Shown piece by piece: positions 10,704 to 61,581 of a stretch of DNA of 64,000 nt. The first letter of the stretch is position 1; every line of letters begins with the position of its first letter. The translations under genes and the position numbers were made by a program. Under the pieces are notes generated by a model. The model had not been told where the DNA came from, did not search any database, and saw nothing but the letters and a program-made list of their open reading frames with translations. Location: the IMG/VR virus record IMGVR_UViG_3300010403_000705, positions 368,845-432,844 of that record. The stretch is one strand, 5' to 3'.

Positions 10704-11324
10704 ATGAGTAAAGATCGAATAACAACATCGCCTAATCTATTAGAATCCTCACCTTTACATCATGAAGCTAGAACACTAGGAGATATTCATTTCCGAGCTT
10801 GGTCACATAATGTACAAGATAAGTATAAAGGGATGGCGGTAGAAGATATTAAAGATGCGTTACAAAAAACATCTTTGCCATATGCTGTATGTTTTGAGCA
10901 TTGGATTGGTGATTTTAATATGGGTACTGGCATACGTAACGCAAATGCTTTTAATGCTAGGGAAGTTTTTTATATTGGTGATAAAAAATGGGATCGCCGA
11001 TCAGCAGTAGGGGTGCATAATTATATTGATGTTAAATGGGTTCCCACAATAGAAGAATTTCTATCTTTAAAAGATAGATATGTTTTCATCGGAGTTGATA
11101 ATATCCCTGGCTCTGTACCGTTAGTGAACTTTAAATGGCCAAAAAATACTTTAATGATTTTTGGTGAAGAAGGTGTGGGTCTTACTCCAGAAATACAATC
11201 ACATTGTGAAGCTATTGTAGCTATTGAAATGTTTGGCAGTGTTCGATCTCTTAATTGTGGAACAGCATCGGGTATTGTAATGTATGATTTTGTATCTAAA
11301 TTAGGAAATATTTATGAAAAGTAA
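10704..11324 (+). CDS. TrmH/SpoU family RNA 2'-O-methyltransferase
   Basis: NMGTGIRNANAF, FGEEGVGL, VRSLNCGTASGI. Confidence 0.88.
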   Translation: MSKDRITTSPNLLESSPLHHEARTLGDIHFRAWSHNVQDKYKGMAVEDIKDALQKTSLPYAVCFEHWIGDFNMGTGIRNANAFNAREVFYIGDKKWDRRSAVGVHNYIDVKWVPTIEEFLSLKDRYVFIGVDNIPGSVPLVNFKWPKNTLMIFGEEGVGLTPEIQSHCEAIVAIEMFGSVRSLNCGTASGIVMYDFVSKLGNIYEK

Positions 11325-11571
11325 AAATAGTTTACCTTTTATGAATAAAAAAGAGATAAAATTTAATGCGCATGATTTAGTAGATTATATAGATGAAGTT
11401 GTGGATCCAGATCATAAGTTATCTATATCTGAAATAGATATGTTGGTATCATTTTCTATGAAAATTCATAATCTTATCCCAGATAAAAGAATGATTTTTG
11501 TTGGTCAAGGATTATATAATGAGTTATGTGTAACTATAACAAAATTGTTTAAAAATTGGATTTTTTCTTAG
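11314..11571 (+). CDS. Hypothetical protein with C-terminal F-x motif
   Basis: Ends KLFKNWIFS*. Confidence 0.6.
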   Translation: MKSKNSLPFMNKKEIKFNAHDLVDYIDEVVDPDHKLSISEIDMLVSFSMKIHNLIPDKRMIFVGQGLYNELCVTITKLFKNWIFS

Positions 11572-11666
11572 AGGTTTTTATGAGTTGCGATAATGATTGT
11601 TGGTTAATGTGACAAACAGGAGTCACAAGTAGTTAAATGGTTGAAACTAACCGAGAAATTATTTAA

Positions 11667-11870
11667 ATGATTAAAAAATTACTTTCTAGAGAAGAAATGG
11701 AAAAGTTAAATACAAGAAGGCTTTTGTCCTATAGAGATAAACTATTATCTTATCATGATTATCCAGACCATGATGATCCTACTTCAATAGGCAAATCTAG
11801 CCCAGAGTGGCAAGAAGCATATCTAAACATTAGAGAAATTCTTTCTACTAGAGAACATGTAGATAGGTAA
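11667..11870 (+). CDS. Hypothetical phage protein
   Basis: 67 aa, ends ILSTREHV. Confidence 0.6.
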   Translation: MIKKLLSREEMEKLNTRRLLSYRDKLLSYHDYPDHDDPTSIGKSSPEWQEAYLNIREILSTREHVDR

Positions 11871-11874
11871 GTTT

Positions 11875-12276
11875 ATGAGACAAGCAGCAGTAATGTTAAT
11901 TATTAAAGAAGGACTAATTTTAGGCGTGAGCCGTCGCCTTGATCCAAATAAATTTGGACTCCCTGGTGGTAAATTAGAGGACAATGAATTTCCAATTGAT
12001 GCAGCAATTAGGGAAACTTTTGAAGAGACTGGGGTAAAAGTAAGTTCTGCTTCTTTTCTTTATGAAAGAATAGAGCCGCCGGGATCACCAGATGGTTATG
12101 CTTTTCAAACATATTGTTATTACGCTGATAGTTGGTCTGGTGAAGCTTCAAAACTTGAAGAGAGTGAAGTTAAATGGGTGACAGAAAATGAATTAGCTTC
12201 TGGTGCTTTTCCAGAGCATAATATTAACACAATTGCAGTATTCAAAACATTATATCCTAATGTTTATATTAAGTAA
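11875..12276 (+). CDS. NUDIX hydrolase
   Basis: GGKLEDNEFPIDAAIRETFEETG Nudix box. Confidence 0.9.
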   Translation: MRQAAVMLIIKEGLILGVSRRLDPNKFGLPGGKLEDNEFPIDAAIRETFEETGVKVSSASFLYERIEPPGSPDGYAFQTYCYYADSWSGEASKLEESEVKWVTENELASGAFPEHNINTIAVFKTLYPNVYIK

Positions 12277-12292
12277 AAAGAAGGAGTTAATA

Positions 12293-19228: not shown

Positions 19229-19498
19229 ATGACACATACATAATACTGATTTGTAGTTTATAAGATGGCGAAAAATTAAGAAATAAGATTAGAAGAAGGT
19301 CTAAGTTCGTTCTTCTTAGTCTAGAAAACGGCTCAATGAAATTTTTTACTTTACTTTATTTTATGATAAATTTAAGAAAGAGTTTACTTCAGGAAGTGAT
19401 TATTTTACTTTTACAGAATTAAGTAAAGAAGTAGCGCGCTCCTCAAAATTGTATAGAAAATTTTGTTCTTTTAAAAAAAACAAAGCATTTATTTAAAA

Positions 19499-20855: not shown

Positions 20856-21755
20856 ATGACTGTAATAAAATCACCATACCCTTATTTTGGAAGTAAGAAA
20901 AGAGTTATTAAGGATGTATGGGATAGATTTGGTGAGATTGAGAATTTTATTGAACCGTTTGCTGGATCACTAGCTGTTATGCTTGGAAATCCTAATATTC
21001 CTAAGATTGAAACGTTAAATGATTTTGATGCTTTCATTCCAAATTTTTGGCGCGCAGTTCAAGCAGAGCCGGATAAAGTAGCTAAACACGCTGATTATCC
21101 AGTTTTGGAAGCTGATTTACATGCTAGGCACAGGTGGTTAATCTCTCCTGCTGCAGATGATTTTAAAAAGAAAATGAGTTTGGATCCGCACTATTATGAT
21201 GCTAAAATAGCAGGATGGTGGGTATGGGGCATGAATGCATCTTTGGGTATCACGTTTTGTAAGCAGCGTGGGTTAAATTGTAAACCATTTTTATCTATGG
21301 TAGGACAAGGAATAACTACACCTACTGTAAATGTTTTAGAATGGTTCAACATCCTACAAAACAGATTAAAAAAAGTTAGAGTATGTTGTGGAGATTGGTC
21401 AAGAGTAGTTACACCTTCAGTAACTTATAAGAATAAAAGCCTAACTAAGAAGGGTATGGTAGGTGTCTTCTTGGATCCTCCATATCTAGTAGAGAATAGA
21501 GAAGATAAACTTTATAGAGTAGAAACTAATGTATTTTATGATGTGTGTAAATGGGCGCTGGAAAATTCTTCAAACCCACGTATGAGAATTGCAGTATGTG
21601 GCTATGAAGGTGATTTTGTTTTTCCCAACGATTGGGATGCATTCAACTGGAACACCGGAGGAGGTTTTTCATCTTTTGCTAAAGATGAAAAAAGAGGCAA
21701 GGAAAACTCTAAAAAAGAAATTATATATTTTTCTCCCTCTTGTCTTAAAGTTTAA
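20856..21755 (+). CDS. DNA adenine methyltransferase (D12 class), copy 1
   Basis: YFGSK, FIEPFAGS, FLDPPY. Confidence 0.88.
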   Translation: MTVIKSPYPYFGSKKRVIKDVWDRFGEIENFIEPFAGSLAVMLGNPNIPKIETLNDFDAFIPNFWRAVQAEPDKVAKHADYPVLEADLHARHRWLISPAADDFKKKMSLDPHYYDAKIAGWWVWGMNASLGITFCKQRGLNCKPFLSMVGQGITTPTVNVLEWFNILQNRLKKVRVCCGDWSRVVTPSVTYKNKSLTKKGMVGVFLDPPYLVENREDKLYRVETNVFYDVCKWALENSSNPRMRIAVCGYEGDFVFPNDWDAFNWNTGGGFSSFAKDEKRGKENSKKEIIYFSPSCLKV

Positions 21756-21919
21756 GATTGTAATTTAGTAATCTCAGCATCAACTGTTTGATCCCATATT
21801 CTTTCAAAAATAGAATCTGCCATTCTATCTGAATCCATGTCATTGATAGGTGTTGTGGATTCTATTTCTGCTTCTTGAGATATTTTTTTTAAGATGTTAA
21901 TTCTTTGATTTTTATTCAT
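21752..21919 (-). CDS. Small hypothetical protein (55 aa)
   Basis: MNKNQRINILKKISQEAE...; coupled to the stop of the 662-aa gene. Confidence 0.5.
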   Translation of the reverse strand: MNKNQRINILKKISQEAEIESTTPINDMDSDRMADSIFERIWDQTVDAEITKLQS

Positions 21920-23900: not shown

Positions 23901-23944
23901 ATTTTTTATTTATTAAGTTTGGGTTATAATTATATATAACATTA

Positions 23945-25670: not shown

Positions 25671-25895
25671 ATGAATTTAAGACAAATATTATGTTACTTA
25701 GATACTTGGGGCAAACATATAGAATCATCAAGATGGTTTGATCAAACTGATTCTAGATATAGATGTATTTTCTTAAAGAAAGGTGGGGATCATTATTGCA
25801 CCAACTGTGGTTATTATTTGTATACTGAATATAATTTTCCAGAATCATTAAAAAAGATGCGTGAGATGTATAAAATGTGGTGGGAAATTAAATAA
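25671..25895 (+). CDS. Hypothetical protein
   Basis: 74 aa, CTNCG. Confidence 0.55.
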   Translation: MNLRQILCYLDTWGKHIESSRWFDQTDSRYRCIFLKKGGDHYCTNCGYYLYTEYNFPESLKKMREMYKMWWEIK

Positions 25896-26155
25896 TGATA
25901 ATTAAAAGTGTACCATCAAGTGTTTATCCAGAAGGAGTTACTAAAAAATATTTAATATTTGAAAAAGAAAAAGATGAACATGTTTGTTCAGTAGAGTTTG
26001 TTGATAAATTAGTTTGGATAAAATTTATAGGTTATGGAATAGAGTTTGCACGTATAAAAAATAATAAATTAGTTTGGACAACTAAGCATGATTTTATCAA
26101 AGAAAAGTATAAAAAAATGATAGATAAGTTAATTAGTTTGCACATTTTTTCTTAA
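25895..26155 (+). CDS. Hypothetical protein with C-terminal F-x motif
   Basis: Ends DKLISLHIFS*. Confidence 0.6.
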   Translation: MIIKSVPSSVYPEGVTKKYLIFEKEKDEHVCSVEFVDKLVWIKFIGYGIEFARIKNNKLVWTTKHDFIKEKYKKMIDKLISLHIFS

Positions 26156-32558: not shown

Positions 32559-32573
32559 ATGATCTACAACAAA

Positions 32574-38100: not shown

Positions 38101-38322
38101 ATGAAAAAAATGCAAGATTGTGATTTTGTCGTAGGTTTTAATAATAAAGGAATCTATGTTTTAAAAGATAGAAATTCATTTTCAGATGAAATTGCTATAA
38201 CATTTCAAGAATTTTTTCATAGATTATCTGATTATTCTTTATATTTAGAGCCAATAAAGATATTCGAGCCTCTAATACAATTTATGTATAAAAAAATTAT
38301 CTCGTTGAAATGTTTTTTATAA
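38101..38322 (+). CDS. Hypothetical protein with C-terminal F-x motif
   Basis: Ends KKIISLKCFL*. Confidence 0.6.
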   Translation: MKKMQDCDFVVGFNNKGIYVLKDRNSFSDEIAITFQEFFHRLSDYSLYLEPIKIFEPLIQFMYKKIISLKCFL

Positions 38323-40112: not shown

Positions 40113-40362
40113 ATTAAAAGATAATTTAGGGAAGAATAAAATTTTCTATATTCATATCTCTAATATTCGTACTCCACTACAAACTATTGAAAATTCATAC
40201 TTAATAGAAGGTCCAAAATCAAAAGAAGATTTTGAAGATTTTAGGTATGAAAATTGGGAGGAACAGATTACTAATTTAGATGAAAAAGATGCATTATTAG
40301 CTTTGACTAAACATGAAGCCGAAAAGCTACAAGCTAGATTAGCCAGGATGCTCTCAGAATGA
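40093..40362 (+). CDS. Hypothetical protein
   Basis: 89 aa ORF. Confidence 0.6.
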   Translation: MMMKRHKLKDNLGKNKIFYIHISNIRTPLQTIENSYLIEGPKSKEDFEDFRYENWEEQITNLDEKDALLALTKHEAEKLQARLARMLSE

Positions 40363-40598
40363 GAGTAGGATTAGAGATAGATATCTCAGGTAGACGTAAG
40401 TGTCGCTACCATAACTGTGATAAAAATCCTGAATATATTGCACAGAATGGAAGAATAAAAAAAGGAACTACCTGTGCCTGGATTTCTGTAGAAGATGCTA
40501 GCGGTTCTTCTTGTGGATATTATTGTAGAGGTTGCATAGATAAAGTTTATGCAGACTTAAAGAAAATACTAAATCCTAATTTATGGGTTTTTCATTAA
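40359..40598 (+). CDS. Zinc-binding (PARP-type finger-like) protein with C-terminal F-x motif
   Basis: SGRRKCRYHNC...IKKG...YCRGC; ends NPNLWVFH*. Confidence 0.6.
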   Translation: MRVGLEIDISGRRKCRYHNCDKNPEYIAQNGRIKKGTTCAWISVEDASGSSCGYYCRGCIDKVYADLKKILNPNLWVFH

Positions 40599-44131: not shown

Positions 44132-44500
44132 ATGAATTATATATTATTGCCTGCCCCAAATAGATTAACAATTTTTGTAAAGGTATCAAACGATATTGAT
44201 AATGGGTGTTATCCATCACGTGTACACTTAGAATCAATAAGTAGAATAGTTAACAATAATAATTGGGACGTAAAGAATATTATAGATAATTATCCGAATT
44301 GTCATGTTACTACTTACCAACCCTACGAAGAAGGCAAAATGTATTATTACATAATTTATGGGGCTGAGGAACAACATATTTCTAATTGGAAGGCTGTTTT
44401 GGAAGAAGCTAGCAATTGTATTGATTTTGATTTCAAAATTTTTCATGCGGCATGTTATACAGTTCAAAGAATATCGGAAAACTTGAGAGTGTTTATTTAA
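44132..44500 (+). CDS. Hypothetical protein with C-terminal F-x motif
   Basis: Ends RISENLRVFI*. Confidence 0.6.
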   Translation: MNYILLPAPNRLTIFVKVSNDIDNGCYPSRVHLESISRIVNNNNWDVKNIIDNYPNCHVTTYQPYEEGKMYYYIIYGAEEQHISNWKAVLEEASNCIDFDFKIFHAACYTVQRISENLRVFI

Positions 44501-47040: not shown

Positions 47041-47070
47041 TATAGTCATTTGAAAGATTTTATAAAACAT

Positions 47071-47438
47071 ATATAGTTGGTTAAGATAATCGCTGCCAAT
47101 TTTAATTGGGAGAGGAAGTTCCGAACACCAATAAAGCAGAGTGCCAGTTAACGGCTGGGTGCAGTGATGCAACTGAAAGTGTAACAGAAAATAAACCGCC
47201 TGTAAAGGTAAGGGTGAAATGGTGAAAAATGGCGAACTAAGAGTGCGCCATGTGTAAGAGACCACCGCATATTTGGTAACAAATATGGCAATACAAACCA
47301 CACTCGGTGCAAGACAAATAGAAAACGTTTGAGAATCGCTTATTCGATGTTTTCGGGTTGTTGCTTGATCCAAATAGTGATATTTGGACTAGATTAATGA
47401 TTATCCTAGACAGAATTCGGGCTACTTATTAACTATAT
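47071..47438 (+). ncRNA. rnpB: RNase P RNA (bacterial type A-like)
   Basis: GAGGAAGTTCCG(AAC), GAAAGTGTAACAGAAA, AGGGTGAAA, GTGCAAGAC, ACAGAATTCGGGCTA; P1 ATATAGTTGGT/ATTAACTATAT. Confidence 0.92.
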
Positions 47439-47472
47439 TTCTTTTATAAAAGTTATCTAAAACATCAATACC

Positions 47473-50570: not shown

Positions 50571-50837
50571 ATGCATCCAGAAGTTAAAGAATTTTGGGAA
50601 CATCATTATAAAAAAGATATTATTGAAAATATAAGTCCAAGATATTATTATATCTCACCCTTAGGCAATAAAAATGGTATAATAATATTAGCTATGTCAT
50701 TTAAAGTAGCGGAAGTAATTAATAATGATAATACGGATTTGTCAAAATTTGATACAAATAAATTAGTATATTTATGGGAAGGGCTTCATACTGAGAATGA
50801 AATGCTGAAGCGTATTAAATTAATAAATTTTTTATGA
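50571..50837 (+). CDS. MHPE-family paralog 1 (F-x tail)
   Basis: MHPEVKEFW...EMLKRIKLINFL*. Confidence 0.7.
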   Translation: MHPEVKEFWEHHYKKDIIENISPRYYYISPLGNKNGIIILAMSFKVAEVINNDNTDLSKFDTNKLVYLWEGLHTENEMLKRIKLINFL

Positions 50838-51067
50838 ACGTCGAGATAAAACAGTATTGGATTAAAAAATTGCAAAAAGATCAGATTTTGATTCCTATAG
50901 AAAATGGATGCTGGAGAGTGCAAGTTAAAAATCAAGATAATACTTGGTTTGCGATTGCCATATTACCTCCTAATAATGTATGGGAGTATCTTTTAGATAA
51001 AGAAGAATGGAAGTTTTATTCTGAATCGGAAGCTTTAAGAAGAATAAGATTAAAATCATTTTGGTAG
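50834..51067 (+). CDS. MHPE-family paralog 2 (F-x tail)
   Basis: EIKQYW...YSESEALRRIRLKSFW*. Confidence 0.7.
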   Translation: MNVEIKQYWIKKLQKDQILIPIENGCWRVQVKNQDNTWFAIAILPPNNVWEYLLDKEEWKFYSESEALRRIRLKSFW

Positions 51068-51078
51068 AGTAATAAAAT

Positions 51079-51324
51079 ATGCATCCAGAAATCATTAAAT
51101 TTTGGAGACAAAATTTTCCTATAGGCAGTATTAAAGGTATTGGTATAGAAATTTATTTTATAATTTCTGATATTGATTATTATAACCAAGGTGGTCTGCC
51201 TCTACCGTTGACTAACGATATTATATACATGAGTTCAAAAACAAATGAACCTTATCAATTGAATAATAAATGGTATTCTGAGGAAATAATGTTGAAAATG
51301 ATTTATTTGAAACCCTTTTTGTGA
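51079..51324 (+). CDS. MHPE-family paralog 3 (F-x tail)
   Basis: MHPEIIKFW...YSEEIMLKMIYLKPFL*. Confidence 0.7.
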   Translation: MHPEIIKFWRQNFPIGSIKGIGIEIYFIISDIDYYNQGGLPLPLTNDIIYMSSKTNEPYQLNNKWYSEEIMLKMIYLKPFL

Positions 51325-51356
51325 TTTATAAAATATAATACGATAATTATTTTGAT

Positions 51357-51620
51357 ATGAGTATACATTCTGATATTAAGAAATTTTGGGAAGATGCTGG
51401 GTACTACATTTCTTCTATAAGAATTTGGGATAAAAATAGAGATGATATAAAAGGTTGGCATAGATATGCCCCACCAGATTTTATAAAAAACAAGATTATT
51501 GCGCGCCATTTTGACATTGACGGTAAACTTGAAATACAATATTTTTTAGATCCATCTGATGGTAATAAATATACCGAGGAAGAAATGTTAAGGTTAATTA
51601 AATTAAAAGGATTTTTATAA
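51357..51620 (+). CDS. MHPE-family paralog 4 (F-x tail)
   Basis: HSDIKKFW...YTEEEMLRLIKLKGFL*. Confidence 0.7.
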   Translation: MSIHSDIKKFWEDAGYYISSIRIWDKNRDDIKGWHRYAPPDFIKNKIIARHFDIDGKLEIQYFLDPSDGNKYTEEEMLRLIKLKGFL

Positions 51621-51627
51621 TATAATT

Positions 51628-51882
51628 ATGCATCCAGAAATTAGAAAGTTTTGGGAAAAAAAATTTCCCATAGGTAGTGTTAAACTTGGTAATACACAGA
51701 TTTATTTTGTGTCTTCTGGTAATACCAAAATTTTTATGGGTGATTTGCTATCAACACATGACGACATCATATATATGGAGTCAAAGACAAAAACTTTACC
51801 CTTTAAGCCATATAAGGTTAATGATAAGTGGTATTCTGAACAAGAAATGTTAAAATTAATTAAGTTAAAGTCCTTTTGGTGA
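51628..51882 (+). CDS. MHPE-family paralog 5 (F-x tail)
   Basis: MHPEIRKFW...YSEQEMLKLIKLKSFW*. Confidence 0.7.
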   Translation: MHPEIRKFWEKKFPIGSVKLGNTQIYFVSSGNTKIFMGDLLSTHDDIIYMESKTKTLPFKPYKVNDKWYSEQEMLKLIKLKSFW

Positions 51883-52775: not shown

Positions 52776-53162
52776 ATGAAAACTGTTAAAGAATTAGTTA
52801 TTGAACATACAGATATGATTAAAAATATGGTTAAAGCTTCTGAAATTAAGTTTTTAGAACCTCACGAGTCGTTTAGTCCAACCACAATTGTTCAACCTGT
52901 GTATGTTTCAGATCAATTGATAGAGATTGGTGTGGATGTTGCAGACTGTGTTGATGTGGAAAAAGAATTTCAGAAAATAGATAAAGAACGTGCCAAGAAA
53001 CAAAAAGAGTTGATTGTTCTGAAAAATAAAATAAATAATGATGATTTTGTGAAAAGAGCTCCATCAGAAATAGTAGAAAAAGTGAGAAATTCAATTAGGA
53101 ATATTGAAGATTTTCTAGACTCTTTAACTTGTTCAGAAGAGAAATTAAAATTAAGTTTGTAA
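52776..53162 (+). CDS. Stand-alone ValRS C-terminal coiled-coil (tRNA-binding arm)
   Basis: VDVEKEFQKIDKE...KINNDDFVKRAPSEIVEKVR. Confidence 0.75.
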   Translation: MKTVKELVIEHTDMIKNMVKASEIKFLEPHESFSPTTIVQPVYVSDQLIEIGVDVADCVDVEKEFQKIDKERAKKQKELIVLKNKINNDDFVKRAPSEIVEKVRNSIRNIEDFLDSLTCSEEKLKLSL

Positions 53163-53189: not shown

Positions 53190-54104
53190 ATGTCATTTAA
53201 GTTTGCTACGTTAGTCGGCTGTGCCATTGGTGATGCTTTAGGTAATCCATTCGAAACAAAATTATCATCATATCAACCTTTACAAGATTGGGATGGAACC
53301 TTCAAAGAAGGTGGAACATTTTGGTGGGGTCAACCAGGACAATATACTGATGATACATTGATGAGTTTAGGATTAGCTAATAGTTTAGTTCGCTGTAAGG
53401 GTTTTGATCCAGTAGATGCTGCCCAAGAATATTTAGCTTGGTATAATTCAAAAAATACGCGAGGTATTGGCGGCACAACTGCTCGAGCTATGCATAACTT
53501 AAAACAAGGTATTCCTTGGACACATAGTGGGATTACTGGCGACACAATTGGTGGTAATGGTACAGCTATGAGGGTATCTCCATTAGGAATCGTTTACAAA
53601 AACGATATCTATAAGCTACTGCAATATGCCATACAAGACGCTCAAATTACTCATAATGCAATAGAGCCAAAGCTAGGATCAATGGCAGTTGCAATTGGCA
53701 CAGCTATGTTAGCGTCTGGTAAATTTTCTTCGATAGATGTGTTAGAAAAATTAATAGAGATGTTGGTAGATTCTATAGTCAAATCTAAATTACTTTTAGT
53801 ACAAGAACATTTGAAAAAAGGTAGCGAACATAAAGATGCATTATTAGAAATTGGATCTTCTGGTTATGTTCCAGAAACTGTTGGAGCTGCTTATTACTGT
53901 TTACTAGCAAATAATAATTTCAAAGACACAGTGATTATGGCAGTTAAAGCAGGTGGTGATACAGATACCACTGCTGCAATTGCTGGAGCTATGGCTGGCA
54001 CCTTATATGGTATAGATGTCATTCCAGATGAATATAAAAATGGAGTTGAAAATTTTGAAATGCTTTCTTCATTAGATGAAGAACTTACTAATATCTTGAT
54101 ATAA
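53190..54104 (+). CDS. ADP-ribosylglycohydrolase (DraG/ARH family)
   Basis: GCAIGDALG, YTDDT, GNGTAMR, ITH, GGDTDTTAAIAGA. Confidence 0.92.
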   Translation: MSFKFATLVGCAIGDALGNPFETKLSSYQPLQDWDGTFKEGGTFWWGQPGQYTDDTLMSLGLANSLVRCKGFDPVDAAQEYLAWYNSKNTRGIGGTTARAMHNLKQGIPWTHSGITGDTIGGNGTAMRVSPLGIVYKNDIYKLLQYAIQDAQITHNAIEPKLGSMAVAIGTAMLASGKFSSIDVLEKLIEMLVDSIVKSKLLLVQEHLKKGSEHKDALLEIGSSGYVPETVGAAYYCLLANNNFKDTVIMAVKAGGDTDTTAAIAGAMAGTLYGIDVIPDEYKNGVENFEMLSSLDEELTNILI

Positions 54105-54727: not shown

Positions 54728-55195
54728 ATGAGTACATATAATCAGGATTTAAGTTTATTTATTAATACACTTGAGCAATACGACTGGTTTTGTGATGTCG
54801 AATTAGATGATTTAGGTAGATTTGTTGTGTATGTAGATAGAATGGATCTTAATTTTATAAGGTCAACACCTGACAAAATTGGTGGTCATCATGTTTTGTT
54901 CCATTATATTTCTAGTCAACCTATGTTGAAAGAAAAACAGCCCAACCATATTGTAAATGTAGAAAATTATCCGACAGAGGAATTGGAAACTAATTTAGAT
55001 TCCTTGATTTTTGAACTAGATAGATTAGAAAAAATTTGTGGATCAAATATTTTACAGGATATTTTTTACGAGGTTCACGATGGCAAAAACGCAGTTACTA
55101 ACCTATCAAATAAATTTCCAGAGGTAAGACAAGTATTAGATTCATTATATAATGAGTATGGATTCGACCTGATCTATGAGGAATTAGATGGATGA
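54728..55195 (+). CDS. Hypothetical protein
   Basis: 155 aa ORF. Confidence 0.7.
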   Translation: MSTYNQDLSLFINTLEQYDWFCDVELDDLGRFVVYVDRMDLNFIRSTPDKIGGHHVLFHYISSQPMLKEKQPNHIVNVENYPTEELETNLDSLIFELDRLEKICGSNILQDIFYEVHDGKNAVTNLSNKFPEVRQVLDSLYNEYGFDLIYEELDG

Positions 55196-55484
55196 TTGTA
55201 TCACTTCAATATTTGAATTAGTATATGATTTATTAAAATCATATAATGTGGTTGATTTAAATAAAAAAGTTTTTGTAGCGCAAGCTAATAAAATATTTAA
55301 TGGTCAACAAAAAATTAAATATGTAGATTTAGGTTACTTATACTTTTATATTAATCGCCCTCTTTATTTATATGTGGGACAAAGTAATAAAAGGTGTATG
55401 AGAAAATTGCCAATTGCTGAGACTAATAATCAAATAGATGAGGTAATAATGAAACGTTTTAGAAGATTAAAAGCATTTTGGTGA
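55188..55484 (+). CDS. Hypothetical protein with C-terminal F-x motif
   Basis: IFELVYDLLKSYN...RFRRLKAFW*; paralog of the next gene. Confidence 0.65.
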   Translation: MDDCITSIFELVYDLLKSYNVVDLNKKVFVAQANKIFNGQQKIKYVDLGYLYFYINRPLYLYVGQSNKRCMRKLPIAETNNQIDEVIMKRFRRLKAFW

Positions 55485-55566: not shown

Positions 55567-55872
55567 ATGACCATACCCAGTATAATACTTTCAGAAATTT
55601 ATGATTTGTTATGTAGCTATAATGAATGTCCAAAGATATCCAAAGAAACATTTGTGGGTTGGTATGCCAAAGGTCATATTTACACTATCAGTATTCAATT
55701 AAGAACTTTAGTATTTACATGTGTAAAACCATTTTCTTGTTCTGTAATTCAGGATGATTTGGAGTTATCAAATAATAATACCGAATTAATGCCTCAAAGT
55801 CAGTTAGATGAATTAAACGAAAAACTTTCTTTGTTTTCTTCAAGATTCTATAGAGTAAAAGTTTTTTGGTAA
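55567..55872 (+). CDS. Hypothetical protein with C-terminal F-x motif
   Basis: EIYDLLCSYN...RFYRVKVFW*. Confidence 0.65.
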   Translation: MTIPSIILSEIYDLLCSYNECPKISKETFVGWYAKGHIYTISIQLRTLVFTCVKPFSCSVIQDDLELSNNNTELMPQSQLDELNEKLSLFSSRFYRVKVFW

Positions 55873-55877
55873 ATTAT

Positions 55878-56201
55878 ATGAATAATAAAAAACAAATTCG
55901 TAAAATTTTTCGTGATGCTTGTCTTAGAAGAGATGATTATAAATGTGTCATTTGTGGTATGAAATCATCACAAGAATTGGCAGAAAAAGAGTTAGATGTA
56001 CATCATATTACTAATAGAAAAGATATTGTAAATGGTGGTTATGTTAAAGAAAATGGTATTTCTTTATGCGGCGCCTGTCACATGAAAGCAGAGAGTTTTC
56101 ATTCTACTGGAATTGCTCTTCCTGGATATTCTATAAATGAACTATATGAAGCTATCAAATCTTCTTTAGGAGCAGCTCAATTAGCTAGTTCGAGATTATG
56201 A
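55878..56201 (+). CDS. HNH endonuclease
   Basis: RDDYKCVICG, DVHHI, NGISLCGACH. Confidence 0.85.
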   Translation: MNNKKQIRKIFRDACLRRDDYKCVICGMKSSQELAEKELDVHHITNRKDIVNGGYVKENGISLCGACHMKAESFHSTGIALPGYSINELYEAIKSSLGAAQLASSRL

Positions 56202-56611
56202 AAAATCTTTCGCTTGATGAATTAAAAGAATTATCTATTTTAGATGTTTTAGATTTTTTAAATAAAAAATGTGAATCATATCTAGTAGAGCAACAAGTAA
56301 TAGTACCGTTTAATGTGGCTATGTCATTCTCTTTTAACATCTGTCTTCCATCCGATCTTCCTCTTAGAGAAGATCAAAATGTGAAAGTTTATATTTTCGA
56401 ATTTGTACGACATTATAATAGATCGTATTCTCTAAAAAACATTGATCCAAAGACTGATAAGAGATTTGTTAATGAGATATGGTCAAAATTATTTATATCT
56501 GAAAATTCTGTTAATGATTTAGGATATGTTGCCGAAAATGTATCTATCGATAATTTGTTAGAAATGATAAAATTTACAGCCCGTCTATCTAGAATTAAAA
56601 TATTTGAATAG
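56198..56611 (+). CDS. Hypothetical protein with C-terminal F-x motif
   Basis: D.RF...W; ends ARLSRIKIFE*; related to 57120..57506. Confidence 0.65.
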   Translation: MKNLSLDELKELSILDVLDFLNKKCESYLVEQQVIVPFNVAMSFSFNICLPSDLPLREDQNVKVYIFEFVRHYNRSYSLKNIDPKTDKRFVNEIWSKLFISENSVNDLGYVAENVSIDNLLEMIKFTARLSRIKIFE

Positions 56612-57119: not shown

Positions 57120-57506
57120 ATGAATAATACAGATATTATGGAAATTTTAACTAAATTAAAGAAAGTCCCACATAAATCATATTATATTTATTGTGTGGGT
57201 GGATTTATAGTTAAGATATATACGCAACGTATACAAGAGCATCCATCAACAGAATGTGTGGATGAATGCCTTACCAAATACAATATAGTGGATGTGGATC
57301 TATATGAATTAACAAGACGGGATGATCCTCGTTTTATAGAGCATACTATGGTGTATTTAGATAAAGATTTTAGATTTAAGAACTATACTCCCATTAAGTA
57401 TGGTAAGTGGGCGGGATATTCTACTGGATTAGAAATGCCATTAATTTATTTATGTGAATTAATAAAATATCTTCACAGATTATCTAGTTTATCAATCTTT
57501 GGTTAA
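57120..57506 (+). CDS. Hypothetical protein with C-terminal F-x motif
   Basis: Ends IKYLHRLSSLSIFG*. Confidence 0.65.
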   Translation: MNNTDIMEILTKLKKVPHKSYYIYCVGGFIVKIYTQRIQEHPSTECVDECLTKYNIVDVDLYELTRRDDPRFIEHTMVYLDKDFRFKNYTPIKYGKWAGYSTGLEMPLIYLCELIKYLHRLSSLSIFG

Positions 57507-57712: not shown

Positions 57713-59794
57713 ATGAAACCTACAAACTTGTCTATAGAAAAATTTAGAAATATTGGTATTATGGCACATATTGATGCTGGTAAAACAACAGTATCAGAGC
57801 GCATATTATTTTATAGTGGACGTATTCATTCTATGGGTGAAGTTCATAACGGTGATACTGTTATGGATGATGATCCTCTTGAAATGAAGCACGGCATCAC
57901 CATTAATTCGGCTGCCACCACTGTGTTTTGGGGCAAAGGTGGAGATATCTATCGTATTAATTTGATTGATACACCTGGTCACATTGATTTTACAGTTGAA
58001 GTTGAAAGATCATTAAGAGTGCTTGATGGTGCTGTATGTGTTCTTGACGGATCCCAAGGTGTTGAACCGCAAACAGAACAAGTATGGAGACAAGCTGATA
58101 AATATAATGTTACTCGTATAATTTTTGTTAATAAGATGGATAAAGTTGGTGCCAGTTTTCAAATGTCTTTGGATTCTTTAAAAGAAAAATTGGGCATTAA
58201 ACCTGTAGCCATTCAATTGCCGGCAGGTGAAGAAGATAAATTCAAAGGTATTTATGATCTGGTTAACATGAAATTAATTTCTTTTGATGAGAAATCTTTA
58301 GGAAGACAATATGATATTTCGGAAATTCCTCTTTCTGCTTTGGAAGAAGTCAAGGCTGCCAGGAATCAAATGATTGAGTCGTTAGCCGATGTTAGTGATT
58401 CTATTATGGAAAAATTTTTGGAGGGTAACCTGAGCGCTATTTCGATTGATGAGATTAAAATTGCTCTTCGTAAAGGTACTATCAACAGAGATTTATATCC
58501 AGTCATGTGTGGATCCGCTCTTCGTAACAAGGGAGTTCAAATGTTATTGGATGCAATAATAGATTATTTACCTTCTCCCATTGATCTGCCAGCTATAGCT
58601 GCGTTATCTAGTACAACAGGTGAAATGTTAAATTTCAAACCAGAAGCTAATGAAAAATTAGCTGCCCTATCTTTTAAGGTCGTTAATGATAAAAATGGTG
58701 ATCTTACATTCATTAGAATTTATTCTGGAACTTTAAGTGCTGGAAGTGTGGTATTTAACTCTACTCGACAACATACAGAACGTATTTCAAAATTGGTTTT
58801 GGTTCATGCTTCAAATAAGAATGAAGAAATAAAATCAGCCGGACCAGGAACTATTGTTGCGGCAGTTGGATTAAAAAATACTTTTACTGGAGACACGTTG
58901 TGTGAAAAGAAAAATCCAATTACCTTGGAGAAGATGGAATTTCCAGAACCAGTAGTAGAATTATCTGTGGAACCAAAAACTAATGCTGACCAAGATAAAT
59001 TATCAGCCGGCTTACAGAAAATGCTTTTATCAGATCCCTCATTGAAAGCGGGTACCAATATTGAAACCGGGCAAACTGTCCTAAAAGGTATGGGCGAGCT
59101 TCATTTGGAGATTGTAGTTGAACGTTTGAAAAGCGTGCATGGTGTTGATGTTAATACTGGTAAACCACAAGTTTCCTATAAAGAAACTATCACTAAGTCA
59201 AGCCAAGCAGATTATAAGTATGTTCGACAATCAGGTGGTAGAGGTCAATATGGTCATGTAGTAATTACTATTACTCCTGCTCCTAGAGGATCTGGATTGA
59301 TTTTTGTTAATGATATTGTAGGAGGAACTATTCCAAAAGAATATGTTCCTGCTGTTGAGAAAGGTATTAAAGGAGCCATGGAAAAAGGTGTATTAGCTGA
59401 TTATCCAGTCGTAGATGTAGAAGTACATCTTGTAGATGGAAGCTATCATAATGTAGACTCAAGTACCAATGCATTCGAAATTGCTGGCTCATTGGCTTTT
59501 CAACAAGCTGCAAAGGGTGCTGGAATGGTTATTTTAGAACCAATTATGGCATTAGAAATTGTAACTCCAGAACAATTTATGGGAGATGTAATTGGTACTG
59601 TTTCATCTAGAGGTGGACATATTAAAGATTCTACTATTAGAGGTAATGCTAGAGTGCTTTCAGCTCAAATGCCATTGAGAAATTTATTTGGTTATACTAC
59701 CGAGCTTCGTGGTAGAACTCAAGGCAGAGCCACACCCTCAGCAATTTTTTCTCACTATGAAGTATGTAATCTAAAATTATCTGAACTGAAATGA
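57713..59794 (+). CDS. fusA: Elongation factor G
   Basis: RNIGIMAHIDAGKTT, DTPGHIDF, NKMD, GMGELHL, QSGGRGQYGHV, SYHNVDSS. Confidence 0.95.
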   Translation: MKPTNLSIEKFRNIGIMAHIDAGKTTVSERILFYSGRIHSMGEVHNGDTVMDDDPLEMKHGITINSAATTVFWGKGGDIYRINLIDTPGHIDFTVEVERSLRVLDGAVCVLDGSQGVEPQTEQVWRQADKYNVTRIIFVNKMDKVGASFQMSLDSLKEKLGIKPVAIQLPAGEEDKFKGIYDLVNMKLISFDEKSLGRQYDISEIPLSALEEVKAARNQMIESLADVSDSIMEKFLEGNLSAISIDEIKIALRKGTINRDLYPVMCGSALRNKGVQMLLDAIIDYLPSPIDLPAIAALSSTTGEMLNFKPEANEKLAALSFKVVNDKNGDLTFIRIYSGTLSAGSVVFNSTRQHTERISKLVLVHASNKNEEIKSAGPGTIVAAVGLKNTFTGDTLCEKKNPITLEKMEFPEPVVELSVEPKTNADQDKLSAGLQKMLLSDPSLKAGTNIETGQTVLKGMGELHLEIVVERLKSVHGVDVNTGKPQVSYKETITKSSQADYKYVRQSGGRGQYGHVVITITPAPRGSGLIFVNDIVGGTIPKEYVPAVEKGIKGAMEKGVLADYPVVDVEVHLVDGSYHNVDSSTNAFEIAGSLAFQQAAKGAGMVILEPIMALEIVTPEQFMGDVIGTVSSRGGHIKDSTIRGNARVLSAQMPLRNLFGYTTELRGRTQGRATPSAIFSHYEVCNLKLSELK

Positions 59795-60018
59795 TATCCT
59801 ATTATTCGATAGATGATAACTACTATCAGATTATTTTTACAAAGAATAGATTAACTATCTGGAAACATAGTGATGTTACCAATAACCATGGTTTTTGGAT
59901 TTATACTGCTAGTGCTAAGATTAAACATGGTAACCTAGACCATAATTGGTCTAGGTCTGTCCCAATAGAACTTAAAAAGTTTTGTGAAAAAATTTTAACA
60001 AATAAGGTATTTTGGTAA
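59791..60018 (+). CDS. Hypothetical protein with C-terminal F-x motif
   Basis: Ends FCEKILTNKVFW*. Confidence 0.65.
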   Translation: MISYYSIDDNYYQIIFTKNRLTIWKHSDVTNNHGFWIYTASAKIKHGNLDHNWSRSVPIELKKFCEKILTNKVFW

Positions 60019-60338
60019 TGTGCACAAGTTGTTTATCTTATACGGTATTAATTTCAAAAGAGACAAAAATTAATTCAGATTCAAGAGTAATTGATTCTCT
60101 AAGAGGTAATGTTAAAGGTGTTATTTTTAATAGAATATATTATAACATTATGCATCCAAAACAATCCTCTTATTGGTGCAATACTTCAGATATAGAATTG
60201 ATGTCAGTCTGTTTGATAAGAAACATCATAGATAACCAAATACAGTGGAATAAATTTGATTATGATCATGAATATCATATGATTTTAAATGGAAAATTTC
60301 TACTGGAAAAATTTAATAAGTTAGTGTTATTTGTATAA
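60018..60338 (+). CDS. Hypothetical protein with C-terminal F-x motif
   Basis: Ends EKFNKLVLFV*. Confidence 0.6.
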   Translation: MCTSCLSYTVLISKETKINSDSRVIDSLRGNVKGVIFNRIYYNIMHPKQSSYWCNTSDIELMSVCLIRNIIDNQIQWNKFDYDHEYHMILNGKFLLEKFNKLVLFV

Positions 60339-60340
60339 TT

Positions 60341-61093
60341 ATGTTATTTATTACTCAACCACGTGTAGGAATTTCTCATAATGAGATTCTAGCTTTACAA
60401 ATCTCAGCCAGAGAATATGGGTGGGATGTAATTCCGGCAGATAGTAGTTGGAGACTTGATGAAGAATTAATAGCCAAAAAACAATTAGGCGTTCCATATG
60501 GTTCACAGATGTTTTGTGAAATTATTGCTCAACAAATGAATTGGAAACTTCATCAAAATGCTTTTGATTGGTTAGCACGATTACCAAAACATTACTTGAA
60601 ACGTCAAGTAGATTTTATGTCATTAAAAGAAGCAAAAAATCTACATGTTAAAAAATTTATTAAACCTGCTGATGATAAATGTTTTGACGCCAAAGTGTAT
60701 GAAGTGGGTACATTTAAACCTTCTGATTTAATATCAGAAGATTATCCAGTCTTAGTTTCTGAAATAGTAAAATGGGATTTAGAATATAGATGTTTTGTTA
60801 AAAATGGCATTGTTTATACTTGGTCTAATTATTTATTTTTTGGTGAAGTAAATGAAAGGAAATATAAGTATATGATTCCTGGAGATGATATCAGACCAGA
60901 TCAATTCGTATTAAATTTATTAAATGAGATTGGTGAAACTCCTAATTGTGTAATTGATATTGGAATTATTCACAATAAAGGTTGGGCGGTAATTGAAACA
61001 AATCCTATTTGGGCATCTGGTATTTATGGATGTGATCCGTATAAAATTATTGAAGCTATGGATGGATCTACTTCATTTTTGGAGAGTAAATGA
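60341..61093 (+). CDS. ATP-grasp protein, R2K-like
   Basis: FIKP, EYRCFV, VIDIG, WAVIETN, SGIYG. Confidence 0.8.
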   Translation: MLFITQPRVGISHNEILALQISAREYGWDVIPADSSWRLDEELIAKKQLGVPYGSQMFCEIIAQQMNWKLHQNAFDWLARLPKHYLKRQVDFMSLKEAKNLHVKKFIKPADDKCFDAKVYEVGTFKPSDLISEDYPVLVSEIVKWDLEYRCFVKNGIVYTWSNYLFFGEVNERKYKYMIPGDDIRPDQFVLNLLNEIGETPNCVIDIGIIHNKGWAVIETNPIWASGIYGCDPYKIIEAMDGSTSFLESK

Positions 61094-61308
61094 CTTACTG
61101 GTTTGAAGAAAAATATGGTATAAGTATTTGTGATCGAGATACGGCAGAAATAATTTTAAAATGGGGACCAGAACTACAATATAAGATGTCCACCTATGTG
61201 GACATTCAAGGGGGTCTAATCATATGGAATCAAGGTAATAGTAAGGGTTTTCCAGCAGAAGCTATTATCTTTTTTAATAAAATAGTGAAAAATAAGGTAT
61301 TTTTGTAA
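61090..61308 (+). CDS. Hypothetical protein with C-terminal F-x motif
   Basis: Ends FNKIVKNKVFL*. Confidence 0.65.
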   Translation: MTYWFEEKYGISICDRDTAEIILKWGPELQYKMSTYVDIQGGLIIWNQGNSKGFPAEAIIFFNKIVKNKVFL

Positions 61309-61581
61309 ATGGAATTTACATTAAATCTTGATAAAAATGAAGTTTATGATATTTATATACATTTAGATCATCTTATAATTCATAAGATAAATAAAGACCA
61401 TACTCTGGGCATTGAGATTTATTTTCAAGTGCCGATTAATAATATAATTCAATGGGAAAATATTTATTCATCACGCCCTTTAGTTGATCTAGCTATTAAT
61501 CCTTATGAAAAAGGAAATTTGCCTCATTATAAAGTAGTGAATTTTTGTAATAAGATAATGAACAATAAAATTTTTTGGTAA
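61309..61581 (+). CDS. Hypothetical protein with C-terminal F-x motif
   Basis: Ends FCNKIMNNKIFW*. Confidence 0.65.
   Translation: MEFTLNLDKNEVYDIYIHLDHLIIHKINKDHTLGIEIYFQVPINNIIQWENIYSSRPLVDLAINPYEKGNLPHYKVVNFCNKIMNNKIFW

What the first reader, a model, noticed from the sequence alone, without database searches (positions are those of the whole stretch)
11314..61581. Shared C-terminal [KR]-phi-x-x-[LN]-K-x-F-x-stop tag on 17 small, mostly unrelated proteins
Seen endings: KLFKNWIFS (11571), KLISLHIFS (26155), KIISLKCFL (38322), LNPNLWVFH (40598), ISENLRVFI (44500), RIKLINFL, RIRLKSFW, MIYLKPFL, LIKLKGFL, LIKLKSFW (50837-51882), RFRRLKAFW (55484), RFYRVKVFW (55872), RLSRIKIFE (56611), RLSSLSIFG (57506), KILTNKVFW (60018), KFNKLVLFV (60338), KIVKNKVFL (61308) and KIMNNKIFW (61581). 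A broken frame ending KKNKAFI* lies at about 19496. Phe is always penultimate, after a basic amphipathic helix, while the N-terminal domains differ. Inference: a modular docking peptide that plugs variable effector or target-binding domains into one common hub (protease/AAA adaptor, clamp, RNA polymerase or membrane/virion portal). This could be an undescribed phage adaptor system.
Basis: partly seen in the sequence, partly recalled or inferred. Interest (0 to 1): 0.85.

Follow-up and report, generated by a model that had tools for sequence, protein, structure and literature searches.

The report
Shared C-terminal helix on phage proteins
A set of small, fast-evolving proteins of an uncultivated 430-kb phage and its relatives all end in the same basic helix with phenylalanine fixed one residue before the end; the signature is real and undescribed, and it probably marks a shared interaction surface whose partner is still unknown.

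Summary
The motif sharpens to [RK]-phi-phi-[KRNS]-[LN]-K-[AVI]-F-x-COOH.

It is far beyond chance. In related phages that were not used to build the matrix, 69 of 528 C-termini score at least 8 bits, against 12 of about 69,000 internal 9-mers. In out-of-frame and antisense reading frames of the window the count is 1 of 773.

It is selected at the protein level. Synonymous codons are saturated while the residues stay invariant, and the tail persists from 31% to 48% GC.

"Mostly unrelated" is overstated. Twelve of the 18 are tandem paralogues in four families: A (5 genes), B1 (2), B2 (2) and C (3, plus one loosely attached). Between families, all detectable similarity sits in the last 8 or so residues.

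The tail is not a freely shuffled tag. No family occurs both with and without it, no protein over 170 aa carries it, and AlphaFold2 places it in the C-terminal helix of two small folded domains.

Family A members picked by their N-terminal motif alone end with F at the penultimate position in 55 of 56 cases, although their lengths run from 66 to 111 aa.

Best reading: these are fast-diversifying small-protein families, possibly one old superfamily, whose conserved helix end anchored at the terminus binds a common partner. The partner is not identified. No Pfam, PHROG, NCBIfam, PDB or literature match was found.

The parts
11314..11571 (+). Single gene S1, 85 aa, tail ...TKLFKNWIFS. No relatives found; its sequence looks all-helical.
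   Evidence: Ending verified. Leave-one-family-out score 11.7, above every internal 9-mer. Only itself found among 5.8e9 proteins and in IMG/VR. The low-confidence ESM model has helical-bundle neighbours.
19320..19496 (+). Remnant resembling family C: 58 open codons with no start codon, ending ...YRKFCSFKKNKAFI and then a stop.
   Evidence: Three-frame translation. Its tail resembles the family C ending ...KFCEKILTNKVFW.
25895..26155 (+). Single gene S2, 86 aa, tail ...DKLISLHIFS, just upstream of the Ro60/TROVE gene.
   Evidence: score 12.2. L013 has a 96-aa protein in the same position ending ...GRISKLKCFL, but the bodies are not significantly similar.
38101..38322 (+). Single gene S3, 73 aa, tail ...KKIISLKCFL, inside the tRNA cluster.
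   Evidence: score 11.2.
40359..40598 (+). Single gene S4, 79 aa, Cys-rich (CxxxxC...CxxC, probably a zinc finger), tail ...NPNLWVFH. Weak motif member.
   Evidence: score 2.5. Orthologues L022 136-378 and L026 2707-2964 keep ...KLWAFH.
44132..44500 (+). Single gene S5, 122 aa, tail ...ISENLRVFI. Weakest motif member.
   Evidence: score -2.6. Proteins at the syntenic position end ...NRV[RK]TILVF[SQ]. The window copy itself did not cluster with them by BLASTP of the bodies.
50571..50837 (+). Family A paralogue 1, 88 aa, tail ...RIKLINFL.
50834..51067 (+). Family A paralogue 2, 77 aa, tail ...RIRLKSFW.
51079..51324 (+). Family A paralogue 3, 81 aa, tail ...MIYLKPFL.
51357..51620 (+). Family A paralogue 4, 87 aa, tail ...LIKLKGFL.
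51628..51882 (+). Family A paralogue 5, 84 aa, tail ...LIKLKSFW. This is the sequence that was modelled.
   Evidence: AlphaFold2: helix 3-12, five strands, helix 71-83, mean pLDDT 70.6.
55188..55484 (+). Family B1 paralogue, 98 aa, tail ...RFRRLKAFW.
55567..55872 (+). Family B1 paralogue, 101 aa, tail ...RFYRVKVFW.
   Evidence: The L002 orthologue ends ...RYKKVKAFW.
56198..56611 (+). Family B2 member, 137 aa, tail ...ARLSRIKIFE.
57120..57506 (+). Family B2 member, 128 aa, tail ...HRLSSLSIFG, directly upstream of the phage EF-G gene.
   Evidence: Orthologues in L002, L004 and L005 keep ...CELI[KR]YL[HY]RLSxLxxFx.
59791..60018 (+). Family C member, 75 aa, tail ...EKILTNKVFW, directly downstream of EF-G.
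   Evidence: AlphaFold2: four-strand beta meander plus helix 59-74, mean pLDDT 88.
60012..60338 (+). Loosely family-C-like protein (C2), 108 aa, tail ...EKFNKLVLFV. Weak motif member.
   Evidence: score 1.4. No significant body match.
61090..61308 (+). Family C member, 72 aa, tail ...NKIVKNKVFL.
61309..61581 (+). Family C member, 90 aa, tail ...NKIMNNKIFW.

Best explanation
The endings are the last two turns of a conserved C-terminal alpha-helix of about 16-20 residues. Its consensus is ...phi-x-[RK]-phi-phi-[KRNS]-[LN]-K-[AVI]-F-x-COOH.

The helix closes small domains of 66-170 aa belonging to several phage-only protein families, here called A, B1, B2 and C plus five single genes. These families sit in the translation and RNA-repair island of a clade of 270-500 kb uncultivated phages. 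They multiply by tandem duplication, reaching nine copies in one relative, and their bodies diverge until no similarity can be detected. The helix end, and its exact distance to the free C-terminus, stay fixed.

Shown:
- The motif is real and specific to C-termini.
- Selection acts on the protein, not the DNA.
- F holds the penultimate position.
- Similarity between families is confined to the tail.
- The genes share a conserved gene order with CYTH, ADP-ribosylglycohydrolase, HNH, EF-G and R2K ATP-grasp genes.

Inferred:
- The families probably descend from one or a few ancestral sheet-plus-helix domains.
- The conserved terminal surface (R at -9, L at -5, K at -4, F at -2, plus the carboxylate) is a common binding interface. 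It would hold variable bodies on one shared partner: an adaptor or decoy family, rather than a portable tag added to arbitrary proteins.
- The partner is unidentified. Candidates are a component of the translation machinery, an AAA+ protease, a clamp or the membrane.
For: - Endings verified exactly.
- Leave-one-family-out scores lie in the top 6e-5 of internal 9-mers for six independent families.
- In loci of other phages, 17/216 and 52/312 C-termini score at least 8 bits, against 5/32,504 and 7/36,592 internal windows.
- Out-of-frame and antisense control in the window: 1/773.
- Tails persist in relatives of 35-48% GC.
- Codon tables show Leu, Ala, Arg and Phe codons varying freely under invariant residues, both between phages and within one nine-copy array.
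- Family A members chosen by the N-terminal motif alone have F at -2 in 55 of 56 cases, with lengths of 66-111 aa. Positions -14, -10, -5, -4 and -2 are nearly invariant while the middle cannot be aligned.
- Across 35 non-redundant tails, -9 is R/K in 33, -5 is L in 26 and -4 is K in 23.
- Similarity between families disappears when the last 8 columns are trimmed.
- The last 4-5 residues of both AlphaFold2 models have lower confidence (60 and 69) than the helix before them (88 and 89), although they are the most conserved residues.
- In family A the hydrophobic residues lie all around the helix, so one face should remain exposed (my reading of the consensus).
- The order CYTH - family A - ADP-ribosylglycohydrolase - p155 - ... 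is conserved in seven loci.
Against: - No partner was identified and no multimer modelling could be run.
- AlphaFold2 places the tail in a regular helix that is part of the fold. The hydrophobic spacing (-2, -5, -8/-9, -12) is also what a helix packed on a sheet would show.
- The tail is never found on large or enzymatic proteins, and it is never gained or lost within a body family. That fits an inherited structural element as well as a docking site.
- hhalign between families A and C gives 70.6% probability over the last 36 columns, which hints at common descent rather than independent acquisition.
- Low confidence at the terminal residues of a model is common and weak evidence.
- Only about 84 kb of the roughly 440-kb genome was inspected.
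Confidence: 0.45

Rival explanations
1. Purely structural signature. All tail-bearing proteins are diverged members of one small sheet-plus-helix superfamily. The conserved C-terminal helix is only the core packing element, and there is no shared partner.
For: - AlphaFold2 models of families A and C both show beta strands followed by a C-terminal helix that contains the tail.
- hhalign between A and C gives 70.6% probability over 36 columns.
- The genes form tandem arrays and cluster together.
- No body family occurs both with and without the tail, and all carriers are 170 aa or shorter.
- The hydrophobic spacing is heptad-like.
Against: - The body signal is nil once 8-10 residues are trimmed.
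- Gene 40359 looks like a Cys-rich zinc finger and 11314 looks all-helical, so at least two different folds are likely (inference).
- A packing helix does not explain why every family stops exactly one residue after F.
- It also does not explain why surface-type residues (R at -9, K at -4) are as conserved as the hydrophobic ones across families.
Confidence: 0.3
2. Membrane-targeting sequence. The basic and aromatic C-terminal helix inserts into the cytoplasmic face of the host membrane, as the C-terminal helices of MinD and FtsA do, and so localises the variable bodies there.
For: - Net charge of the last 11 residues is +2.4, against +0.3 for other C-termini.
- The tail ends in F with W, L or I.
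- ...KLKSFW and ...SLSIFG resemble the Bacillus subtilis MinD ending ...AKIKSFFG... (sequence recalled from memory, so a lead only).
Against: - The helical hydrophobic moment (0.29) is no higher than that of other C-termini in the same proteomes (0.31).
- Known membrane-targeting helices tolerate variable distance to the terminus, whereas here the position of F is invariant.
- The helix is predicted as part of a folded domain.
Confidence: 0.08
3. C-terminal degron or protease tether. The tail is recognised by a host or phage AAA+ protease (ClpX, Lon). Recognition would either time the removal of these proteins or, as with the C-terminal ClpX-binding peptide of SspB, tether bound cargo to the protease.
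For: - The fixed distance to the terminus fits recognition of a free C-terminus.
- Family A contains LR[IV][IV]K, which resembles the SspB ending LRVVK. Endings such as ...AVFA resemble the Mesoplasma florum ssrA tag ending ...YAFA, which Lon recognises. Both comparison sequences are recalled from memory, so these are leads only.
Against: - None of the known degron consensus sequences is actually matched at the terminus.
- No protease gene was seen in the 84 kb examined.
- Known degrons usually lie in disordered tails, not in helices.
Confidence: 0.08
4. Substrate handle for C-terminal modification. The neighbouring R2K-clade ATP-grasp ligases act on the free carboxylate of these tails, either adding residues as RimK and tubulin-tyrosine ligase do, or ligating the small protein to a target.
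For: - Two R2K ATP-grasp genes (60341-61093 and 62242-63135) lie among the family C genes, and an ADP-ribosylglycohydrolase gene (53190-54104) lies nearby.
- The R2K and ADP-ribosylglycohydrolase linkage, with unknown protein targets, was noted by Burroughs et al. 2015 (PMC4431377).
- A strict distance to the terminus would suit an enzyme that activates a carboxylate.
Against: - Loci L005, L007 and L008 carry family A and family C-like tails but no R2K gene within 20 kb, and L006 has only a fragment.
- The last residue, which would be the one activated, is the most variable of the final six positions.
Confidence: 0.05
5. Artefact of base composition or a DNA/RNA-level element. On this view an AT-rich genome makes K, F, L and I common near stops, or a repeated regulatory or recombination sequence supplies the last codons.
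For: The window is 31% GC. Out-of-frame and antisense frames have 8.7% penultimate Phe.
Against: - The motif persists at 45-48% GC.
- Synonymous sites are saturated under invariant residues.
- 1 of 773 out-of-frame or antisense frame ends matches.
- Internal 9-mers almost never match.
- All three stop codons follow the motif.
Confidence: 0.01

Closest known systems
C-terminal sliding-clamp-binding peptides: bacterial beta-clamp motif QL[SD]LF, PIP box QxxLxxFF, and the T4/RB69 gp45-binding tails
   Same: A short motif at or near the C-terminus with hydrophobic residues spaced L-x-phi-F. [KRS]-L-K-[AVI]-F overlays Q-L-[SD]-L-F at the L and F positions, and L(-5)...F(-2)-[WLF](-1) overlays the LxxFF core of the PIP box. 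Many different proteins use these motifs to dock on one ring.
   Different: No Gln at the defining first position in any of 35 non-redundant tails. The tail is basic rather than acidic as in T4 and RB69. It is predicted to be helical and part of a fold rather than a disordered peptide. It always has exactly one residue after F.
The C-terminal ClpX-binding peptide of SspB (...LRVVK-COOH) and other AAA+ adaptor tethers
   Same: A terminal basic and aliphatic peptide on an adaptor whose body binds cargo. Family A contains LR[IV][IV]K.
   Different: In SspB the peptide is the very end of a long disordered linker. Here LRIIK is followed by LKAFL and sits in a helix. No link to ClpX has been shown.
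C-terminal membrane-targeting helices of MinD and FtsA
   Same: C-terminal, basic and aromatic, about 10-15 residues, ending in F or W; present on otherwise different proteins.
   Different: The hydrophobic moment is not raised. The strict distance to the terminus has no known counterpart in those helices.
Encapsulin cargo-loading peptides
   Same: A conserved extreme C-terminal peptide that directs diverse proteins to one HK97-fold shell. This is the closest conceptual precedent for a shared C-terminal address in the phage world.
   Different: The consensus is unrelated (a Gly/Ser-rich LxxGSL type against a basic helix ending in F-x). Encapsulin cargo are enzymes of many sizes. Here the carriers are only small proteins, encoded away from any structural genes seen.
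Tandemly amplified families of small proteins without known relatives in the variable regions of T4-like and jumbo phages
   Same: Small, phage-only, tandemly duplicated, fast-diverging and of unknown function. Foldseek's nearest neighbours are uncharacterised small proteins of jumbo phages (TM up to 0.58, not significant).
   Different: In the libraries and literature I could search, no such family has a signature shared between families and fixed to the C-terminus.

Membership tests
Bacterial beta-clamp-binding motif (QL[SD]LF / QLxLxL) | Conserved Gln at motif position 1 | tested here: not met
   Position -6 is K, R, N, S, T or Y and never Q in 35 non-redundant tails.
Bacterial beta-clamp-binding motif (QL[SD]LF / QLxLxL) | Hydrophobic L at position 2 and F or L at position 5 | tested here: met
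   L at -5 in 26 of 35 tails; F at -2 in all, by selection. In family A picked independently of the tail, F at -2 in 55 of 56.
Bacterial beta-clamp-binding motif (QL[SD]LF / QLxLxL) | Binding to a sliding clamp | not testable with these tools
   No multimer prediction or binding assay was available, and no clamp gene was seen in the 84 kb examined.
PIP box (QxxLxxFF) | Gln at -8 relative to the aromatic pair | tested here: not met
   Position -8 is L, I, M, F, R, V or N.
PIP box (QxxLxxFF) | An aromatic pair at the last two motif positions | tested here: inconclusive
   F at -2 always. Position -1 is W in 10 and L in 10 of 35, and otherwise I, S, G, H, E and others.
MinD/FtsA-type membrane-targeting helix | A strongly amphipathic helix with a raised hydrophobic moment and a basic polar face | tested here: inconclusive
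   Net charge is +2.4 against +0.3 for other C-termini. The hydrophobic moment is 0.29 against 0.31 for other C-termini, and E. coli MinD itself scores only 0.27 on the same scale.
MinD/FtsA-type membrane-targeting helix | Membrane localisation that depends on the helix | not testable with these tools
   Needs microscopy or liposome binding.
SspB-type C-terminal ClpX-binding peptide | An [LI]-[RK]-[VI]-[VI]-[KR] peptide at the extreme C-terminus of a disordered tail | tested here: not met
   The LRIIK-like string lies at -10 to -6, not at the terminus, and the region is predicted helical.
Encapsulin cargo-loading peptide | A Gly/Ser-rich LxxGSL-type C-terminal consensus (consensus recalled from memory) | tested here: not met
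   No G-S-L pattern appears in any tail.
Any curated protein family (Pfam, PHROGs, NCBIfam) or solved structure | A significant profile or fold match | tested here: not met
   No PHROG hit for any of the 18. No Pfam hit with E below 0.04. No credible NCBIfam hit. No PDB sequence hit. No Foldseek hit with E of 0.001 or less in the PDB or BFVD.

The most novel reading that the evidence does not exclude
The tail is a true C-terminal address signal: a recognition element read in a fixed position relative to the free C-terminus. It would recruit a whole repertoire of hypervariable small phage proteins to one hub, most attractively a component of the translation apparatus, given the surrounding genes for EF-G, EF-Ts, aminoacyl-tRNA synthetases, tRNAs, RNase P RNA, RNA repair, ADP-ribosylglycohydrolase and R2K ligases. 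The variable bodies would capture or block different host factors. That would be a previously undescribed adaptor system of huge phages.
Probability: 0.3. Interest if true: 0.8.

Novelty: new variant of a known kind. Interest (0 to 1): 0.55.

Why it matters
Huge phages carry hundreds of small genes of unknown function. A short signature shared by many of them, under strong selection and fixed to the C-terminus, gives a rare experimental handle.

- One peptide could be used to pull out a common partner.
- One point mutation (F to A) or a one-residue extension could disable a whole gene repertoire.
- If the partner belongs to the translation machinery that these phages partly re-encode, the finding would show how such phages take over or protect host translation.
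- If the tail proves to be only structural, the result still defines a new, easily recognised small-protein superfamily. It also gives internal evidence that this phage uses TAA, TAG and TGA all as stops.

Tried and rejected
- **Tail-only profile search.** A 30-column profile of the tail (alignment A7) searched against 1.84e9 representative proteins returned two hits: a tandem fusion of two family A units, and a family C fragment. The profile carries too little information for that database size, so this says nothing about modularity.
- **IMG/VR scans with single proteins.** 11314, 25895 and 40673 returned only the source contig.
- **Search of 5.8e9 proteins with 11314.** Only itself was found.
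- **Scan of 185,579 species genomes for family A.** No relative was found. The first attempt failed because the alignment had no conserved stretch to search with.
- **Fold searches.** Foldseek on both AlphaFold2 models against the PDB, and on the family C model against BFVD, found nothing significant. The ESM Atlas gave no useful neighbour.
- **Iterative HMM search with family C bodies (tail removed).** It recruited nothing beyond the seed sequences. My visual impression of a shared 'N-K-I-V-W' element linking 25895, 60012 and L013 8759-9049 to family C is therefore unsupported.
- **Walking downstream of the window.** Only a gene list came back, no DNA.
- **DNA-element and composition explanations.** Rejected on codon evidence.
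- **Stop-codon recoding.** Rejected: identical motifs end at TAA, TAG and TGA, and none of the 24 tRNAs is a suppressor.
- **Dependence on R2K ATP-grasp genes.** Weakened, because they do not strictly co-occur with tail-bearing genes.
- **62242-63135.** It ends ...ILYDQFQ, with a penultimate F but no motif. It is an R2K ATP-grasp enzyme and not a member.

Full report
**Source and setting**

The window is the last 64 kb of IMG/VR contig IMGVR_UViG_3300010403_000705 (432,844 bp). An ENA assembly of the same phage is 447,666 bp. The DNA is about 31% GC.

The window encodes:
- 24 tRNAs and a full-length class-A RNase P RNA;
- two aminoacyl-tRNA synthetases, EF-G, a Ro60/TROVE protein and an ADP-ribosylglycohydrolase;
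- an RNA ligase, a CYTH enzyme, RNase HII and two R2K ATP-grasp enzymes.

RtcB lies just upstream of the window and EF-Ts just downstream. This is a translation and RNA-repair island of an uncultivated huge phage.

**The observation**

All 18 endings translate exactly as quoted and stop where stated. The "broken frame" is real: 19320-19493 is open for 58 codons, has no start codon, and ends ...YRKFCSFKKNKAFI. That ending resembles the family C tails.

Phe is penultimate in 19 of 114 ORFs against 4.7% Phe overall (P = 1.6e-6), and no neighbouring position is enriched. Counting each paralogue family once leaves 10 of 105 (P = 0.026). Phe alone is therefore weak evidence; the full motif is not.

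- With a 9-residue scoring matrix built without the family under test, the tails of A, B1, C, 11314, 25895 and 38101 outscore at least 99.994% of 16,969 internal 9-mers.
- B2, 40359 and 60012 are intermediate, and 44132 is weak.
- Only 1 of 773 out-of-frame or antisense frame ends matches.

**How related the 18 are**

BLASTP and alignments give four groups and five single genes:
- family A: 50571, 50834, 51079, 51357 and 51628, full-length tandem paralogues;
- family B1: 55188 and 55567, full length;
- family B2: 56198 and 57120;
- family C: 59791, 61090 and 61309, with 60012 loosely attached;
- single genes: 11314, 25895, 38101, 40359 and 44132.

"Mostly unrelated" is therefore overstated.

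Between families, hhalign finds only the last 15 or so residues. With deeper profiles, A against C reaches 70.6% probability over the last 36 columns. Every signal between families vanishes once the last 8 columns are removed. An iterative HMM built from family C bodies without the tail recruits nothing new.

**Evidence from other phages**

Related loci came from IMG/VR (L002, L004-L008, L012-L014) and from JGI metagenomes (L017-L039). They represent phages of 35-48% GC with contigs up to 498 kb.

- The tails persist in these relatives, for example ...RLSNLTAF[ML], ...KKLKAFW, ...RIIKLAVFA, ...KLW[AV]FH and ...TIL[VMT]F[QS].
- Further tail-bearing proteins appear, ending ...KLKLKAFW or ...RKINMxLLFQ. 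Others ending ...NKLKTYxVF[SQ] cluster by body with the ...TILVF[QS] group.
- C-termini scoring at least 8 bits number 17/216 and 52/312, against 5/32,504 and 7/36,592 internal windows.
- Proteins that do not align by body carry identical ends. ...MLRMIKLKAFL (family A) and ...YNRVIKLKAFL (family C-like) occur in one 12-kb contig.

Family A has a conserved N-terminus (MHPEIRKFWEDAGY), a hypervariable middle and a conserved end (Y[ST]ExEMLRIIKLKAFL). It forms arrays of up to nine copies (L025).

**The level at which selection acts**

Codon tables show free synonymous variation under invariant residues, both between phages and within the nine-copy array. There, Leu at -10 uses five codons, Leu at -5 four, Ala four, Arg three and Phe two.

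This excludes a DNA or RNA element, gene conversion and base composition as explanations. The motif is followed by TAA, TAG and TGA alike, so all three act as stops in this phage.

**The fixed position of F and the shape of the motif**

Family A members selected only by their N-terminal motif end with F at -2 in 55 of 56 non-redundant cases, while their lengths range from 66 to 111 aa. The single exception looks truncated.

Across 35 non-redundant tails from all families:
- -9 is R or K in 33;
- -5 is L in 26 (N in 5);
- -4 is K in 23;
- -3 is A, V or I in 24;
- -1 is variable, mostly L, W or I.

Net charge of the last 11 residues is +2.4, against +0.3 for other C-termini. The helical hydrophobic moment is not raised (0.29 against 0.31).

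**Structure**

- AlphaFold2 with family alignments gives, for family A, helix 3-12, five strands and helix 71-83 (mean pLDDT 70.6).
- For family C it gives a four-strand beta meander plus a helix at 59-74 (mean pLDDT 88, pTM 0.73).
- In both models the tail is the end of the C-terminal helix, and confidence drops over the last 4-5 residues.
- Foldseek finds no significant match in the PDB or BFVD.
- There is no Pfam, PHROG, NCBIfam or PDB sequence match.
- Searching the literature library for the tail strings finds nothing relevant.

**Modularity**

After removing the last 12 residues and clustering, no body family occurs both with and without the tail, and every carrier is 170 aa or shorter. 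The only body homologues lacking a motif-like end are two family A ORFs that look truncated.

The 10 kb upstream of the window holds no carrier among 17 genes. The first 11 kb of the window holds none either.

The tail is therefore not a tag shuffled onto arbitrary domains. It is an inherited and most-conserved part of a set of small-protein families.

**Genomic context**

Seven loci share this gene order:

CYTH - family A (one to several copies) - ADP-ribosylglycohydrolase - p155 - (B1) - HNH - (B2) - p112 - (B2) - (EF-G) - C - (R2K ATP-grasp) - RNase HII

Burroughs et al. 2015 noted the linkage of R2K ligases with ADP-ribosylglycohydrolase and the unknown protein targets of those ligases (PMC4431377). 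R2K genes are, however, absent from several 20-kb loci that carry the tails.

**Interpretation**

The best-supported account is this. Small phage-only families multiply in tandem and diverge fast in their bodies. They keep a C-terminal helix whose end is fixed in position relative to the free terminus.

I favour a shared-partner interface (confidence 0.45), for four reasons:
- F holds its position in every family;
- surface-type residues are conserved across families;
- hydrophobic residues lie all round the family A helix;
- the tail is more conserved than the body.

Membrane targeting, a degron or protease tether, and a substrate handle for the R2K ligases remain minor rivals. Composition or a DNA element is refuted.

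**Comparison with known systems**

The hydrophobic spacing overlays clamp-binding and PIP motifs, but the defining Gln is absent. Family A contains a string like the SspB C-terminal ClpX-binding peptide, but not at the terminus. The resemblance to membrane-targeting helices lacks a raised hydrophobic moment. Encapsulin cargo-loading peptides are the closest precedent in concept but are unrelated in sequence. I file the tail under none of these.

**Verdict**

The signature is undescribed, so I class it as a new variant of the known kind "C-terminal recognition or packing motif". Interest is moderate to high (0.55), and it would be higher if a common partner were demonstrated.

Noticed in passing
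window 47073-47440 (+): A full-length bacterial class-A RNase P RNA (RF00010, 247.5 bits, model positions 1-367) is encoded by the phage, between a SIMPL-domain gene and an RNA ligase gene. The antisense ORF 47011-47373 that a mechanical ORF call places there is spurious.
   Followed up: partly
window 57713-59794 (+); downstream of the window in ENA contig k141_5300428: The phage encodes a complete five-domain EF-G (89% identical in L002, 63% in L004). According to the gene list of the longer assembly, it also encodes EF-Ts and a NAMPT-type enzyme just beyond the window end.
   Followed up: partly
window 53190-54104, 60341-61093 and 62242-63135 (+): An ADP-ribosylglycohydrolase and two R2K-clade ATP-grasp ligases lie in one island. 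This is the same linkage that Burroughs et al. 2015 reported in Firmicutes, with unknown protein targets. The R2K genes are missing from several related loci.
   Followed up: partly
window 26259-27851 (+): A Ro60/TROVE protein with a vWA domain, 66-81% identical in three other phage contigs. No Y-RNA-like family reached the Rfam gathering threshold nearby.
   Followed up: partly
window 52776-53162 and 63437-64000 (+): Stand-alone pieces of aminoacyl-tRNA synthetases: a 128-aa protein that matches only the ValRS tRNA-binding arm, and a 187-aa ORF that matches part of a class II (D/K/N) catalytic core and ends at the last base of the window.
   Followed up: no
window 32317-38961 (+): A dense tRNA cluster holding 20 of the 24 tRNAs. 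ARAGORN reports one tRNA with a two-base anticodon at 36229-36300, and Rfam adds tRNA-like hits at 34257-34364 and 34670-34741 that ARAGORN does not list. No suppressor tRNA was seen.
   Followed up: no
window 20856-21755 and 24646-25548 (+): Two 300-aa paralogues (55% identical) flank a minus-strand block (21752-24625) that includes a 662-aa protein with no Pfam match. This is the only stretch of the window that runs against the + strand.
   Followed up: no
L025 654-3015; protein P0049: Nine family A genes in an uninterrupted tandem array with overlapping stop and start codons. Elsewhere, a 165-aa protein consists of two family A units fused in frame; in its first unit the tail is altered (...LRIIRKMAIFM) and reads on into the next unit's N-terminal motif.
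   Followed up: partly
window 55866-56201 (+) and 45745-46323 (+): Small HNH endonuclease genes lie among the tail-bearing genes. The one between B1 and B2 keeps its position in six related loci, so it is probably not a recent mobile insertion.
   Followed up: partly
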